Both the position numbers and the translations under genes were made by a program. DNA of 63,376 nt, the filler included, from Octopus bimaculoides (lineage: Eukaryota), in NCBI RefSeq assembly GCF_001194135.2. It is 4 parts of 4 records of this genome, joined end to end, with 100 filler letters (N's around TTAATTAATTAA, not from the genome) between each part and the next. Parts side by side here need not be neighbours in the genome. Positions count along the whole stretch, not along the records: positions 49,505 to 61,273 come from NC_069006.1; 3 more parts are not named here. One strand, 5' to 3'. Below the pieces are notes generated by a model, which saw nothing but the letters and a program-made list of their open reading frames with translations, ran no database searches and was not told the DNA's origin. This document shows, piece after piece, positions 51,579 to 61,373 of this stretch. Numbering within the stretch: the stretch's first letter is position 1; each line of letters begins with the position of its first letter.

Positions 51579-51969
51579 CTTCGGGTTACTTTTGTCACCA
51601 TTCCAGAAAGCAAGGCTTACCGAAATACAAAGAATGGCAGTCTTTTCATCACCTGTTTCCTCAATGGCTATGAAAATAATATAGAAAAGTGTGATATCTC
51701 ATTATCTAAAACAAATAAATTCACAAGTGGCTAAGATAGACGATCAGATTCTTAAGGATCAGGGTTCTAAGCATCAGTGTTCTAAGGATCAGATTTCAAA
51801 GGATCAGGGTTCTAAGCAGCAGTGTTCTAAGGATCAGATTTCAAAGGATCAGGGTTCTAAGCAGCAGTGTTCTAAGGATCAGGTTTCTAAATATCAGACT
51901 GCTGAGAATCAAGTTTCAAGTAATCATTCCACTTTAAAGAGAAAGGTGATACTTCAAGCCACAGACTAA
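51579..51969 (+). pseudogene. Inverted 3' fragment of the caspase-like gene (small subunit only), frameshifted
   Basis: LRVTFVTIPESKAYRNTKNGSLFI...EKCDIS aligns to LYVTFATVPESKAFRTEESGSVFI...EKCDIS of the 54799-56111 gene. A frameshift near 51700-51712 is followed by QINSQVAK, the (SKDQx)n array and STLKRKVILQATD*. The 3' flank matches that gene for ~90 nt. Confidence 0.85.
51742..51897 (+). repeat. 15-bp coding minisatellite (SKDQx pentapeptide) with a 45-bp higher-order unit
   Basis: Units tctaaggatcagatt / tcaaaggatcagggt / tctaagcagcagtgt repeated about 3 times. Confidence 0.9.
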
Positions 51970-53989: not shown

Positions 53990-54289
53990 CAACATAGTTC
54001 TGATATTAATTACTCAGAGCCTATTGGATGAGGAACATTTCAATTAGTGTACATACGCCATAACGTCTCTAGAGAAAATGTATCTAGTCGTAACAGTTTT
54101 TCATTGTATGGGAGTGGGTGGAGTTATGCGGTCATATGACTAGCAGTAATAATAGCATGTTTATACATACACATATATATAGCTATACACACATGCATAC
54201 ATATATGTATATATACACACATACATATTCAGACACACACACACACATATATATATATACATATACATTTCAAAATGTAACCACATATG

Positions 54290-54798: not shown

Positions 54799-56111
54799 TT
54801 AATCTGTGGCTCGAAGTATCACTTTTTTCTTCAAGGTGGAATAACAACTTGAAACCTGATCCTTAGAAATCTNNNNNNNNNNNNNNNNNNNNNNNNNNNN
54901 NNNNNNNNNNNNNNNNNNNNNNNNNNNNNNNNNNNNNNNNNNNNNNNNNNNNNNNNNNNNNNNNNNNNNNNNNNNNNNNNNNNNNNNNNNNNNNNNNNNN
55001 NNNNNNNNNNNNNNNNNNNNNNNNNNNNNNNNNNNNNNNNNNNNNNNNNNNNNNNNNNNNNNNNNNNNNNNNNNNNNNNNNNNNNNNNNNNNNNNNNNNN
55101 NNNNNNNNNNNNNNNNNNNNNNNNNNNNNNNNNNNNNTCAGGTGATAATGATGAGATGTCACATTTTTCTTTGTTCCTTTCATAAACAGTGAGTAAACTT
55201 TTGATGAAAACAGAACCACTTTCCTCAGTTCGGAAAGCCTTGCTTTCTGGAACAGTGGCAAAAGTAACATATAGATGTGGAACGTTGAAATATTGCTTCA
55301 CGTCTTCCTTTTCTGAATTAGTTTCACCACCTTTGCTACATTCCGCGTCCTCTTTGACTTGAGGTTTACTTTGACAAGTATTTTTATTAGTTGGACAAGC
55401 ATCGGTATCGTTCGCGACATTATTCTTATTAGATTTAATTTGATAAGTATTTATATAAATGAGTTTTGGTTTGTCGTTCAACTGAGTACTCTTTAGAATT
55501 GTATTAATAATGGAATAAGGTAATTTCTCACCATCAATTCCAACAATATTCCCTTGAGTCCCATGTGACATTAAGAACATGACGAAACAATCTTCACTTG
55601 CTGTACTTTTCTCCGATGCTCTCTCAATTATTATTTTCATTTCCTCGGCCTTTTTATCAGAATAAAGTTCAACATCGAAATTGAAAGCCTTGAAAAGTTT
55701 CATAATAGCTTCCACATCCTTTTCGCTTCCATGCCTTTCATTGTATGCCACCTCATCGTCAAATTTCACATTATTTATTAATATAACACGACCATGTGGT
55801 TTGAATTTCATCGGGTAGACTAGCGGATCGTCTAATAGCTTGAGTATTTCATTATGTTCTGACTTTTCCAAAGCCGACACAAATTTACTGGATCCATCTG
55901 GTAGTTTCTTATATAGGATATCATGTAACCGTCGATTCTGATTCCTAGAATCTCTTTCAGACATTATTGTCTCTCTATTGCTCTTAGTCAATAAACCATT
56001 GGCTAAAGCTTCATCCAGAAAGGATCCAATATCGTCCAAATGTTTTACAAAATCAACTCGGAGTTTTTGAAATTGATCCTTAGAAATATAATACAGTTGT
56101 TCAGCATTCAT
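54799..56111 (-). CDS. Intronless CARD + peptidase C14A caspase-like protein; catalytic His present, catalytic Cys replaced by Tyr (predicted pseudo-caspase)
   Basis: N-terminal six-helix CARD-like pattern (LRVDFVKHL...FLDEAL..GLLT...IM...NRRLHDIL....KFVSAL), YPM..PHGRVILINN, ERHGSEKD, CFVMFLMSHG (His183), KPKLIYINTY (Tyr223), FRTEESGSVFI. After the N gap (54873-55137) the true frame reads ISKDQVSSCYSTLKKKVILRATD* (stop 54799-54801), matching the paralogues. The ORF-track end at 54831 is a gap-length artefact. Confidence 0.92.
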
Positions 56112-59020: not shown

Positions 59021-59095
59021 AAGCCTATCATTGGGTTGGGAGGGAAGACATTACATACATATATATACATATATATATATATATATTTATCTATG

Positions 59096-59156
<61 letters not shown>

Positions 59157-59499
59157 AGATATGTGTGTGTGTGTGTACATGCAACACAGGACAACAATCT
59201 TTAAAAAATTTCTGTAGTATGAGAATATATTTTACTGATTCTGTCTTTCATGGGCTAATTTCGAATCTGTAATTGGTTTTGCTTTCCATGCTCTCAATTT
59301 CTTGCAATTTGAAGATACATACATACATCAAGATATATACAGAGATATAAATATATATATACGTATATACACACATACACTATATATATATATATGTGTG
59401 TGTGTGTATGTATATATAAATATATACACTAATCTATACATGTCATGCCAAATCAGACTGCAACATGGTGCAGCTTCCAATCTTACTAGTTTTCAGTCA

Positions 59500-60453: not shown

Positions 60454-61272
60454 TTAGTCTGTGGTTCGAAGTATCACCTTTTTCGTCAATTTGTGAGAAC
60501 CACTTGGAATTTGAGCGAATTCCTCATAATTCTGATATATTTCCTTAGAATTCTCTTCGTTTTTCTTGGAAACTTGTGATATTATTTGATCAGATAATGC
60601 AAAGATGTCACACCTTTCTTTGTTCCTTTCGTAGACGCTGATTAAACTTTCGATGAAGTAACTTCCTTTGTCACGAGTTCGGTAAGATAATCTTCCAGGA
60701 ACAGTGGAAAAAAATACATATAGGTCTGGAGCATCAAAATATCCATCCTTACCTTCCTTATCAGAATTAGCTTCACAAGCGTTGACATAAATGAGTTTTG
60801 GTTTGTTTTTCAGCTGAGAACTATCTTGTAGAATTGTATTAATAGTGGAATAAGGTAATTTCTCACCATCAGTTCCAACAATATTCCCTAAAACCCCATG
60901 TGACATCAAGAACATGACGAAACAATCTTCACGGGCTGTACTTTCTGCAGCTTCTTTTAGAATTACGTCTTCCATTTCCTCGGCCGTTTTATTAGAATAA
61001 AGTTGAACATCGAAATTAAAAGCAGTGAAAAGTTTCGTAATACCCTCCACATCCTTTTCGCTTCCGAGCCTCTCCGGATACTTCGCATCGTCAAATTTCA
61101 CATTATTTATTAATATAACACGACCATGTGGTTTGAACTTCATCGGGTAGACTGTCTGTTCGTCTAAAAGATCAAATATCTTAATATGTTTCGACTTTTC
61201 CAAGGCTGTCATCAATTTATCTGAAACCTTCGGAAGTTTCTTAAATATATAATCATGTAACTTTCGTATTTG
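60454..61272 (-). CDS. Intronless CARD-caspase paralogue, 5' end lost in a gap; His/Cys dyad intact in an atypical NACEA motif
   Basis: The frame extends upstream of the TTG-started ORF (QIRKLHDYIFKKLPKVSDKLMTAL, CARD helices). YPMKFKPHGRVILINN, ERLGSEKD, FLMSHG (His codon 60898-60900), KPKLIYVNACEA (Cys codon 60775-60777), SYRTRDKGSYFI, KKVILRTTD*. Confidence 0.92.
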   Translation of the reverse strand, partial: QIRKLHDYIFKKLPKVSDKLMTALEKSKHIKIFDLLDEQTVYPMKFKPHGRVILINNVKFDDAKYPERLGSEKDVEGITKLFTAFNFDVQLYSNKTAEEMEDVILKEAAESTAREDCFVMFLMSHGVLGNIVGTDGEKLPYSTINTILQDSSQLKNKPKLIYVNACEANSDKEGKDGYFDAPDLYVFFSTVPGRLSYRTRDKGSYFIESLISVYERNKERCDIFALSDQIISQVSKKNEENSKEIYQNYEEFAQIPSGSHKLTKKVILRTTD

Positions 61273-61373
61273 GNNNNNNNNNNNNNNNNNNNNNNNNNNN
61301 NNNNNNNNNNNNNNNNNTTAATTAATTAANNNNNNNNNNNNNNNNNNNNNNNNNNNNNNNNNNNNNNNNNNNN

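What the first reader, a model, noticed from the sequence alone, without database searches (positions are those of the whole stretch)
55443..55445. Catalytic Cys codon is TAT: one A-to-I edit would switch the caspase back on
Seen: the codon at the catalytic position (residue 223, after KPKLIYI-N-T) is TAT, the paralogue has TGT, and an internal repeat in the same gene reads AAT ACT TGT CAA versus AAT ACT TAT CAA here, so the ancestral state was Cys. Neighbouring differences from the paralogue (ATA/GTC, ACT/GCT) also have A in place of G, each preceded by T. Established: coleoids recode mRNAs extensively through ADAR, UAU to UIU is read as Cys, and 5' U is a favoured neighbour. Inference: the gene could be a genomically dead protease or decoy whose activity is gated by RNA editing in a tissue-, temperature- or age-dependent way. 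The null explanation is an ordinary G>A mutation, a polymorphism or an assembly error.
Basis: partly seen in the sequence, partly recalled or inferred. Interest (0 to 1): 0.85.

Follow-up and report, generated by a model that had tools for sequence, protein, structure and literature searches.

The report
Octopus caspase copy lacking catalytic cysteine
One gene in a tandem cluster of Octopus bimaculoides CARD-caspases has tyrosine in place of the catalytic cysteine; the same change is in eight Octopus vulgaris copies, so it is an old inherited substitution that makes a dead-enzyme paralogue, and nothing I could test suggests that RNA editing switches it back on.

Summary
On the minus strand, codon 223 (55445-55443) is TAT in KPKLIYI-N-T-Y-Q. 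By alignment to caspase-7 this is the catalytic Cys position. The neighbouring paralogue has TGT, and a real in-frame 69-nt tandem duplication carries a second NTC 23 codons downstream.

The piece is Octopus bimaculoides (XP_052832856.1), part of a tandem array of single-coding-exon CARD-caspase genes.

The same AAT ACT TAT is present in 8 of 15 array copies in O. vulgaris (4 intact, 4 broken). It is therefore neither an assembly error nor a private polymorphism. It most likely predates the split of the two species. The one O. sinensis copy of this type has TGT, probably through gene conversion.

This subfamily evolves under relaxed constraint: dN/dS is 0.67 against 0.24 for a neighbouring orthologue pair, and at least 1 among the recent Tyr copies.

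The editing idea has no support:
- there is no G>A excess in this gene;
- the "neighbouring A-for-G" sites are the family's majority states;
- the site lies in one of the least structured parts of the mRNA, with no complementary arm;
- the UAU context is shared by 25 other adenosines.

No RNA data could be reached, so editing is not excluded (about 3%). Best reading: a cFLIP-like pseudo-caspase, or a copy on its way to decay.

The parts
55138..56111 (-). Gene A (XP_052832856.1, 'caspase-7-like', O. bimaculoides). Coding sequence from ATG (56111) to the last sequenced base before the assembly gap: 324 codons plus 2 nt, with no intron.
   Evidence: ORF list and translation; 100% match to P0001.
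54873..55137 (.). Assembly gap of 265 N inside the p10 part of gene A. By comparison with orthologues it hides about 12 codons. Its length is arbitrary, so the frames on its two sides cannot be linked.
54799..54870 (-). C-terminal end of gene A after the gap: ISKDQVSSCYSTLKKKVILRATD plus stop TAA (54801-54799). The RefSeq model misses it and splices around the gap to an unrelated tail (…KFSCLLDLLFCFILLYSSP).
55836..56072 (-). CARD prodomain (residues 14-92).
   Evidence: Pfam PF00619, E = 9.9e-8; coordinates.
55146..55793 (-). Caspase domain (residues 107-322; the p20, the linker and part of the p10).
   Evidence: Pfam PF00656, E = 3.6e-30; phmmer to caspase-7/-3/-9/-8 structures for the orthologue.
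55563..55565 (-). Catalytic His183 codon (in FLMSHG), retained.
   Evidence: Alignment to caspase-7 LLSHG; invariant in the family; coordinates.
55443..55445 (-). Tyr223 codon TAT at the catalytic Cys position (N-T-Y-Q-I where caspases have Q-A-C-x-G).
   Evidence: in the AF2 model of the orthologue the residue sits at the end of the beta strand.
55383..55451 (-). Repeat unit 1 (NTYQIKSNKNNVANDTDACPTNK). It holds the Tyr codon and a conserved Thr-Asp-Ala.
55314..55382 (-). Repeat unit 2 (NTCQSKPQVKEDAECSKGGETNS). It holds the second NTC (Cys246 codon 55376-55374) and a conserved Asp-Ala-Glu-Cys. It lies in the inter-subunit linker, which is predicted disordered in the orthologue.
55734..55736 (-). 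Arg126 codon (ERHG), which aligns with the first S1-pocket arginine of caspase-7 (VRNGTDKD); retained.
55230..55232 (-). Arg294 codon (AFRTEESGS), which aligns with the second S1-pocket arginine (SWRSPGRGS); retained.
60454..61273 (-). Paralogue gene B (P0022). It has the end of a CARD plus a complete caspase domain, with catalytic TGT at 60777-60775. Its 5' end is cut by the edge of the piece.

Best explanation
Gene A is one member of an Octopus-specific tandem array of single-coding-exon CARD-caspase genes that evolves by duplication, gene conversion and loss.

In one subfamily, the catalytic motif and the start of the inter-subunit linker were duplicated in tandem (69 nt). In the copy of the motif that sits at the structurally correct place, TGT mutated to TAT. 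This is an ordinary G>A transition fixed in the genome. It most likely happened before O. bimaculoides and O. vulgaris separated.

The encoded protein keeps its CARD, the catalytic His and both S1 arginines, but has no nucleophile. It is a pseudo-caspase.

Shown here:
- the substitution and its position;
- its presence in two species;
- the duplication;
- the intact ORF on both sides of the gap;
- relaxed but not absent constraint.

Inferred: if the protein still does anything, it works without catalysis. The CARD would bring it into the same activation complexes as its active neighbours. There it would pair with or compete against them, as cFLIP-L does for caspase-8. Its long Asp-containing linker could also make it a cleavable substrate. 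Activity would then be set by how much of it is made, not by recoding.
For: Species and locus: 100% match to O. bimaculoides XP_052832856.1 on CM046626.1. The neighbours P0022, P0007 and P0012 lie on the same strand.

Position: Tyr aligns with caspase-7 Cys186; the His and both Arg are retained. In the AF2 model of the intact orthologue the strand (residues 227-235) ends at NTYQ, and residues 236-283, which contain the second NTC, have pLDDT below 50.

Age:
- AAT ACT TAT occurs in 8 of 15 O. vulgaris array copies. Four have intact ORFs of 362-370 codons (P0003, P0023, P0024 and the copy at 33,751,657).
- dS between gene A and these copies is 0.22, close to the 0.26-0.27 of a neighbouring orthologue pair.
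- The O. vulgaris Tyr copies differ from each other by dS 0.013-0.032 (P0024 and P0003 show no synonymous difference). That is at least the O. vulgaris/O. sinensis divergence of 0.010-0.016, so Tyr predates that split too.
- The only O. sinensis gene of this type has AAC ACT TGT. Its differences from P0003 cluster in about 130 nt ending at the catalytic codon, which is the pattern of a conversion tract.

Constraint:
- dN/dS of gene A against P0003 is 0.67 (bootstrap 95% interval 0.47-0.99). The Cys-bearing neighbour P0007 against its orthologue gives 0.24 (0.15-0.37).
- The CARD gives 0.41, the protease domain 0.72 and the linker 1.24.
- Under strict neutrality at d = 0.10-0.125, an ORF of this length stays free of stop codons in only 1-2% of simulations.
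Against: Constraint is weak.
- Changes private to gene A are 5 synonymous and 21 non-synonymous (omega about 1).
- dN/dS among the intact O. vulgaris Tyr copies is 1.1-2.3, though on only 3-7 synonymous differences.
- Half of the O. vulgaris Tyr copies carry stops or frameshifts.

All of this fits a copy that is simply decaying.

The CARD and p10 of gene A are closer to its neighbour P0007 (dS 0.16 and 0.125) than to the cross-species orthologue. Gene conversion from intact neighbours could therefore keep the ORF open without any selection on gene A.

The ratio of CARD to protease-domain constraint is the same as in the active control pair, so nothing points specifically to a CARD-only function.

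Expression, dimerisation and cleavage were not testable. About 12 codons are hidden in the assembly gap.
Confidence: 0.55

Rival explanations
1. Functionless relic. After losing the nucleophile the copy is drifting towards pseudogene status. Its ORF is still open only by chance and because gene conversion from intact neighbours keeps repairing it.
For: Omega on gene A's own lineage is about 1.0 (5 synonymous, 21 non-synonymous). Omega is 1.1-2.3 among O. vulgaris Tyr copies, and 4 of those 8 are broken. Linker omega is 1.24. There are signs of conversion with P0007 in the CARD and the p10. For the p20 plus linker, the part showing no sign of conversion from P0007, the chance of staying stop-free under neutrality is 11-16%, which is not small.
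Against: Pairwise omega between species is below 1 (0.67, P(omega >= 1) = 0.02). CARD omega is 0.35-0.41. The ORF is intact in O. bimaculoides and in four O. vulgaris copies, although the substitution is probably older than the species split. Cys-type copies of the array are also often broken (2 of 7 frameshifted and 1 truncated) and also show omega about 1 among recent duplicates, so these signs are not specific to the Tyr copies.
Confidence: 0.33
2. ADAR edits the middle A of UAU so that the codon is read as Cys (restorative editing), and protease activity is gated by the editing level.
For: The change is the right type: a G>A substitution at an essential site in a coleoid, where a single A>I restores the ancestral residue. 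The 5' neighbour is U. All other catalytic residues are intact. An ORF kept open for a long time despite a dead codon is what the harm-permitting model of restorative editing would allow (PMC6881472). A sister species has G at the site.
Against: - No RNA evidence exists. The protein's cluster holds a single genome-derived sequence and no Cys variant.
- No caspase or Peptidase_C14 row appears in the held part of a published table of O. bimaculoides neural recoding sites. That table is cut and uses the older annotation, so this is weak evidence.
- No dsRNA is predicted: z = -0.08 for 301 nt and local pairing in the 3.6th percentile. There is no complementary arm.
- The context is unspecific: 70 adenosines with a 5' U, 25 in UAU, 10 TAT codons.
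- There is no G>A excess and no dip in synonymous divergence near the site.
- Protease-domain constraint is relaxed.
- Published work reports median restorative editing levels below 2.5%, and high editing activity observed so far only in neural tissue (PMC6881472).
Confidence: 0.03
3. The second NTC (Cys246, unit 2 of the duplication) supplies the nucleophile, either directly or after unit 1 is removed from the transcript, so the enzyme is not dead.
For: NTC is kept in unit 2 in all copies of this type in three species. Unit 2 is slightly better conserved than unit 1 (14 against 11 of 23 residues between O. bimaculoides and O. vulgaris, counted from the sequences).
Against: Cys246 lies 23 residues beyond the end of the beta strand that positions the nucleophile. 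In the AF2 model of the orthologue it is in a segment with pLDDT 24-31. No in-frame GT-AG excision recreates KPKLIYINTC; every candidate deletes the strand itself. Because the O. vulgaris and O. sinensis linkers are nearly identical, conservation rests on only two independent lineages and is not significant.
Confidence: 0.03
4. Artefact: a sequencing or assembly error, or a rare allele of the reference animal.
For: The reference is a gapped short-read assembly and a 265-N gap lies about 300 nt away. No second O. bimaculoides individual could be examined.
Against: The same codon with the same synonymous neighbour (AAT ACT TAT) is in eight copies of an independent O. vulgaris assembly. The surrounding sequence reads cleanly in frame.
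Confidence: 0.03

Closest known systems
cFLIP-L (CFLAR), the vertebrate pseudo-caspase paralogue of caspase-8/-10
   Same: It is a full-length paralogue lying next to its active relatives. It keeps the recruitment domain and the caspase fold but lacks the catalytic Cys (PMC7281445; pseudoenzyme that heterodimerises with caspase-8, bioRxiv 10.1101/2023.01.04.522766). From my own knowledge, the replacing residue in human cFLIP-L is also Tyr. It has a long cleavable linker.
   Different: The recruitment domain here is a single CARD, not tandem DEDs. The His is retained here; from my own knowledge it is lost in cFLIP-L. The origin is independent and confined to one genus. Constraint is weak, and no binding or regulatory activity has been shown.
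CARD decoys derived from the caspase-1 locus (CARD16/COP, CARD17/INCA, CARD18/ICEBERG; caspase-12) - from my own knowledge
   Same: They are lineage-specific tandem duplicates of a CARD-caspase that lost catalysis and interfere with CARD-mediated activation of their parent.
   Different: Most of those are truncated to the CARD alone. Here the whole protease-like domain is kept and only the nucleophile is lost.
Restorative A-to-I editing under the harm-permitting model in coleoids (Jiang and Zhang 2019, PMC6881472)
   Same: A non-synonymous G>A substitution at a conserved site in a coleoid, where one A>I would give back the ancestral amino acid.
   Different: Editing at this site has not been observed. 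No duplex is predicted, the gene is not known to be neural, and typical restorative editing levels are a few per cent.
Mollusc caspase-3/6/7 genes with long inter-subunit linkers (PMC11543851)
   Same: They are tandemly duplicated mollusc caspases whose linker grew by intra-exonic insertion. In oysters the linker modulates cleavage activation.
   Different: That group is bivalve and gastropod, has linkers of 63-286 residues and keeps QACRS. Here the insert is about 39 residues, arose by duplicating the active-site motif itself, and is combined with loss of the Cys.

Membership tests
Caspase (peptidase family C14A) | Caspase p20/p10 fold | tested here: met
   PF00656, E = 3.6e-30, residues 107-322. 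The orthologue P0003 matches caspase-7, -3, -9 and -8 structures at E down to 1e-21.
Caspase (peptidase family C14A) | Catalytic His in SHG | tested here: met
   FLMSHG aligns with caspase-7 LLSHG and is invariant in 19 family members.
Caspase (peptidase family C14A) | Catalytic Cys in the QACxG pentapeptide | tested here: not met
   The pentapeptide is N-T-Y-Q-I, with Tyr223 at the Cys position. Active-looking relatives in the array have N-T/A-C-Q/E-x.
Caspase (peptidase family C14A) | Two S1-pocket arginines for Asp specificity | tested here: met
   Arg126 (ERHG) and Arg294 (FRTE) align with the caspase-7 arginines.
CARD-caspase (initiator-type architecture) | N-terminal CARD | tested here: met
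   PF00619, E = 9.9e-8, residues 14-92. In the AF2 model of the orthologue the N-terminal helical bundle has pLDDT 87-96.
Pseudo-caspase of the cFLIP-L kind | Caspase-like domain without the nucleophile, with the recruitment domain kept | tested here: met
Pseudo-caspase of the cFLIP-L kind | Maintained by selection (intact ORF, dN/dS below 1) | tested here: inconclusive
   The ORF is intact on both sides of the gap. Pairwise omega is 0.67 (0.47-0.99), but omega on the gene's own lineage is about 1.0 and is at least 1 among O. vulgaris Tyr copies, half of which are broken.
Pseudo-caspase of the cFLIP-L kind | Is expressed, and binds and modulates an active paralogue | not testable with these tools
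   No transcript or protein data were reachable.
ADAR recoding site | A in genomic DNA read as G in RNA of the same animal | not testable with these tools
   No reads were available. The protein cluster holds only the genome-derived sequence. The held part of one published recoding table has no caspase entry, which is weak evidence.
ADAR recoding site | Target adenosine lies in a stable RNA duplex with a complementary arm | tested here: not met
   z = -0.08 for 301 nt. Local pairing is in the 3.6th percentile and the best single partner has probability 0.22. The only inverted match is 12 nt of AT-rich sequence. These are predictions only.
ADAR recoding site | Favourable neighbours (5' neighbour not G) | tested here: met
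   The context is U-A-U. The feature is unspecific: 70 of 357 adenosines have a 5' U.
ADAR recoding site | Reduced synonymous divergence around a conserved site | tested here: not met
   dS is 0.19 for the p20, 0.21 for the linker and 0.175 for the p10, so there is no local dip.
Pseudogene | Stop codons or frameshifts in the reading frame | tested here: not met
   None in the 324 + 23 sequenced codons. About 12 codons hidden in the gap are untested.

The most novel reading that the evidence does not exclude
The Tyr codon is a restorative editing site. In some tissue or condition ADAR converts UAU to UIU often enough to produce an active CARD-caspase, so a protease would be switched on at the RNA level. 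That would also explain why an ORF with a dead catalytic codon has stayed open in two octopus species. The evidence here does not exclude it, because no RNA data were reachable. It only makes it unlikely.
Probability: 0.03. Interest if true: 0.8.

Novelty: new member of a known kind. Interest (0 to 1): 0.3.

Why it matters
If the main reading is right, octopuses independently produced a full-length caspase paralogue that lost its nucleophile to the same residue as vertebrate cFLIP-L, here on a CARD scaffold. In O. vulgaris it was then amplified to eight copies.

That makes it a compact natural system for asking how dead-enzyme regulators arise inside tandem protease arrays. It also shows how gene conversion can erase, and apparently restore, a catalytic residue at the DNA level.

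In practice, the current RefSeq model of this gene is wrong at its C-terminus because of an assembly gap. Automatic names such as 'caspase-7-like' or 'caspase-8-like' hide both the CARD and the missing cysteine.

The editing hypothesis remains cheap to test with existing public reads. It should be tested before anyone builds on it.

Tried and rejected
1. Hyper-editing footprint. I polarised substitutions against 12 other copies and found no G>A excess in gene A. Rejected.

2. Editing-complementary sequence. An inverted-repeat search over the gene and its 5' flank, a 301-nt fold with shuffles and a partition function over 1,163 nt found nothing.

3. Cryptic intron that would splice out unit 1 and bring NTC next to the strand. 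No in-frame GT-AG excision does this. Rejected.

4. Second NTC as the nucleophile. It lies in a segment predicted disordered, 23 residues past the strand. Rejected as unlikely.

5. Transcript-derived or edited protein variants in the 5.8-billion-protein collection. The cluster has one member. Nothing found.

6. Published editing tables.
- Liscovitch-Brauer 2017 and Albertin 2015 are not held.
- The Shoshan 2021 supplements have no caspase entry.
- The Cell Reports 2023 recoding table is cut and has no caspase or Peptidase_C14 row in the held part.
- Albertin 2022 treats editing in squid only.

7. Literature on octopus caspases, or on editing of caspases. Nothing specific was found.

8. Domain-specific relaxation (CARD kept, protease domain freed). 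The ratio is the same in the active control pair. Not supported.

9. Excess pseudogenisation of Tyr copies in O. vulgaris. 4 of 8 Tyr copies are broken against about 3 of 7 Cys copies, so there is no difference.

10. Rfam scan of the piece. No RNA family was found.
Full report
**What is in the sequence.**
- The piece carries two caspase genes on the minus strand.
- Gene A starts at 56111. It reads KPKLIYINTYQIKS, with codon 223 = TAT at 55445-55443; the + strand base at 55444 is T.
- Gene B (60454 to the edge of the piece) reads KPKLIYVNACEANS, with TGT at 60777-60775.
- Gene A matches Pfam CARD (residues 14-92) and Peptidase_C14 (residues 107-322). Gene B matches Peptidase_C14, and its CARD is cut by the piece's edge.
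- Gene A is 100% identical to O. bimaculoides XP_052832856.1 ('caspase-7-like') on chromosome record CM046626.1.

**Gene model and gap.**
- A run of 265 N (54873-55137) interrupts gene A in the p10 part.
- After the gap the sequence reads ISKDQVSSCYSTLKKKVILRATD and then TAA (54801-54799). This is the family's normal C-terminus.
- By comparison with orthologues the gap hides about 12 codons.
- The RefSeq protein instead ends in KFSCLLDLLFCFILLYSSP, and its model spans 2,573 nt for 334 residues. It splices around the gap, so its tail is an artefact.
- All sequenced codons (324 + 23) are open.

**Is Tyr223 the catalytic position?** Yes.
- The intact O. vulgaris orthologue P0003 aligns to caspase-7 as KPKLIYVNTYQF against KPKLFFIQACRG. 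It also aligns LMSHG with LLSHG, ERLGSEKD with VRNGTDKD, and AYRTEESG with SWRSPGRG.
- Gene A therefore keeps the catalytic His and both S1 arginines and lacks only the nucleophile.
- An AlphaFold2 model of P0003 has mean pLDDT 63. The CARD is confident, the p20 moderate and the p10 poor. It places a strand at residues 227-235 that ends at NTYQ. Residues 236-283 have pLDDT below 50.

**The internal repeat.**
- Unit 1 (55451-55383, NTYQIKSNKNNVANDTDACPTNK) and unit 2 (55382-55314, NTCQSKPQVKEDAECSKGGETNS) are 69 nt apart and in frame.
- They match at 44 of 69 positions. The null from 38,025 other in-frame segment pairs has mean 20, sd 3.8 and maximum 36.
- Paralogues without the duplication go straight from NTCQ-x to ...YFNVP.
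- The duplication therefore lengthened the inter-subunit linker by about 39 residues and left a spare NTC inside it.

**Other species.**
- All close relatives found are from O. bimaculoides, O. vulgaris and O. sinensis.
- The genes lie in tandem arrays, and each has a coding sequence without introns.
- Across about 90 kb of O. vulgaris OX597839.1 there are 15 copies. Eight carry both the duplication and AAT ACT TAT.
- Four of the eight are intact: P0003, P0023, P0024 and the copy at 33,751,657.
- The other four have a stop codon or frameshifts.
- Copies of this type with Cys also exist: P0009, P0011 and one truncated copy in O. vulgaris, and the single O. sinensis gene (AAC ACT TGT).

**Is the Tyr shared by descent?** Probably.
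- dS between gene A and the O. vulgaris Tyr copies is 0.22. A neighbouring orthologue pair gives 0.26-0.27.
- The O. vulgaris Tyr copies differ from each other by dS 0.013-0.032 (P0024 and P0003 show no synonymous difference), and from the O. sinensis Cys copy by 0.023-0.028.
- The O. vulgaris/O. sinensis divergence measured on two other orthologue pairs is 0.010-0.016. The Tyr copies therefore began to diverge at or before that split.
- The differences between the O. sinensis gene and P0003 are concentrated in about 130 nt ending at the catalytic codon. Upstream in that tract the O. sinensis gene is identical to its own downstream neighbour. This is the pattern of gene conversion.
- P0009 is a chimera. 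It diverges from the Tyr type up to about 20 nt past the catalytic codon and is nearly identical to it afterwards.
- One ancestral C>Y change followed by conversion or recombination explains the data with fewer events than parallel double changes (AAC>AAT and TGT>TAT) in two lineages.
- This is an inference. I put it at about two in three.

**Selection.**

| Comparison | dN/dS |
|---|---|
| Gene A vs P0003 | 0.67 (bootstrap 0.47-0.99) |
| Gene A vs the O. sinensis copy | 0.62 (0.42-0.94) |
| P0007 vs its O. vulgaris orthologue (Cys-bearing control) | 0.24 (0.15-0.37) |
| Gene A vs P0003, CARD | 0.41 |
| Gene A vs P0003, protease domain | 0.72 |
| Gene A vs P0003, linker | 1.24 |
| Control pair, CARD / protease domain | 0.16 / 0.29 |
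| Among intact O. vulgaris Tyr copies | 1.1-2.3 (only 3-7 synonymous differences) |
| Among Cys copies of the same subfamily | 0.9-1.2 |

- The relaxation in gene A is general rather than domain-specific, because the CARD-to-protease ratio is the same as in the control pair.
- Changes private to gene A are 5 synonymous and 21 non-synonymous.
- A neutral simulation keeps the whole ORF free of stop codons in 1-2% of runs. For the p20 plus linker the figure is 11-16%.
- Gene A's CARD and p10 are closer to its neighbour P0007 than to the orthologue. Conversion may therefore help to keep the frame open.

**Testing the editing idea.**
GTC and GCT are peculiar to gene B.
- Changes private to gene A show no G>A excess: 3 G>A, 3 C>T, 5 A>G, 1 T>C and 14 transversions.
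- The 5' U is shared by 70 of 357 adenosines. 25 sit in UAU, and there are 10 TAT codons.
- A 301-nt fold centred on the site has z = -0.08 against shuffles.
- In a partition function over 1,163 nt the best partner of the site has probability 0.22. The mean pairing of the +-10 nt around it is in the 3.6th percentile of all adenosines.
- The only inverted match is 12 nt of AT-rich sequence in the 5' flank.
- Synonymous divergence shows no local dip.
- Published work describes restorative editing under the harm-permitting model. It reports median levels below 2.5%, with high editing activity so far seen only in neural tissue (PMC6881472).
- I could reach no RNA data for this gene.

**Other routes to an active enzyme.**
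- No in-frame GT-AG excision puts NTC next to the strand.
- The second Cys lies in a segment predicted disordered.

**Conclusion.**
- The codon is a real, old, fixed G>A substitution in a fast-turnover caspase array.
- The protein is a pseudo-caspase. It is either weakly maintained as a non-catalytic CARD partner or decoy, in the manner of cFLIP-L, or on its way to decay.
- An RNA-editing switch is not excluded, but it has no support. I put it at about 3%.
- The closest described parallels are cFLIP-L, the CARD decoys of the caspase-1 locus, and mollusc caspases with expanded linkers.
- I found no paper describing this octopus subfamily.

Noticed in passing
window 51579-51969 (+ strand): A caspase remnant holding only the p10 part, on the opposite strand. 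It reads LRVTFVTIPESKAYRNTKNGSLFITCFLNGYENNIEKCDIS, then has a frameshift, then a tail ending STLKRKVILQATD*. A 45-nt tandem repeat (3.2 copies, 51742-51887) expands an SKDQ-rich stretch. No p20 lies upstream within the piece.
   Followed up: partly
window 54799-55137; L004:10001-12573: The RefSeq model XP_052832856.1 splices around the 265-N gap to an unrelated 19-residue tail. The true C-terminus lies directly after the gap.
   Followed up: yes
L003, L008, L001, L007 (O. vulgaris OX597839.1, 33.72-33.81 Mb): An array of 15 CARD-caspase copies. Eight are Tyr-type (four intact) and seven are Cys-type (two frameshifted, one truncated). One block lies on the opposite strand.
   Followed up: yes
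L002:34819-35904 (O. sinensis) against L001:10001-11110: The only O. sinensis gene with the duplication has Cys. Its differences from O. vulgaris P0003 cluster in about 130 nt ending at the catalytic codon. Upstream in that tract it is identical to its own downstream neighbour (L002:38109). This looks like gene conversion restoring the Cys at the DNA level.
   Followed up: partly
L003:10001-11080 (O. vulgaris P0009): A chimeric gene. It is highly diverged from the Tyr type up to about 20 nt past the catalytic codon and nearly identical to it afterwards, so a recombination breakpoint sits right beside the active-site codon.
   Followed up: partly
window 55836-56111 and 54802-55300, against L005:10001-10963: Gene A's CARD and p10 are closer to its neighbour P0007 (dS 0.16 and 0.125) than to the cross-species orthologue (0.31 and 0.175). 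This points to gene conversion within the species.
   Followed up: partly
all family members (alignment A1): The whole Octopus family has N-T/A-C-Q/E-x where caspases have Q-A-C-x-G. The S1 glutamine is Asn and the final Gly is missing. Whether the Cys-bearing members are conventional Asp-specific proteases is untested.
   Followed up: no
P0002 (O. vulgaris, 472 aa; L001:19191 onward): The annotated protein begins with three near-identical partial CARD segments in a row (MSMNEDRVYYIYKDQFQKL...). This is either a real repeat or a gene model that merges broken copies.
   Followed up: no
window 55398-55409 and 55344-55355: Two Asp-Ala sites in the linker, NDTD|A and VKED|A, are conserved as GTD|A and KVD|A in O. 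vulgaris and O. sinensis. They are candidate caspase processing sites, one in each repeat unit.
   Followed up: no
window 54162-54259, 59055-59154, 59333-59426: TA/CA microsatellite tracts give rise to several of the long spurious ORFs in the mechanical ORF list.
   Followed up: no
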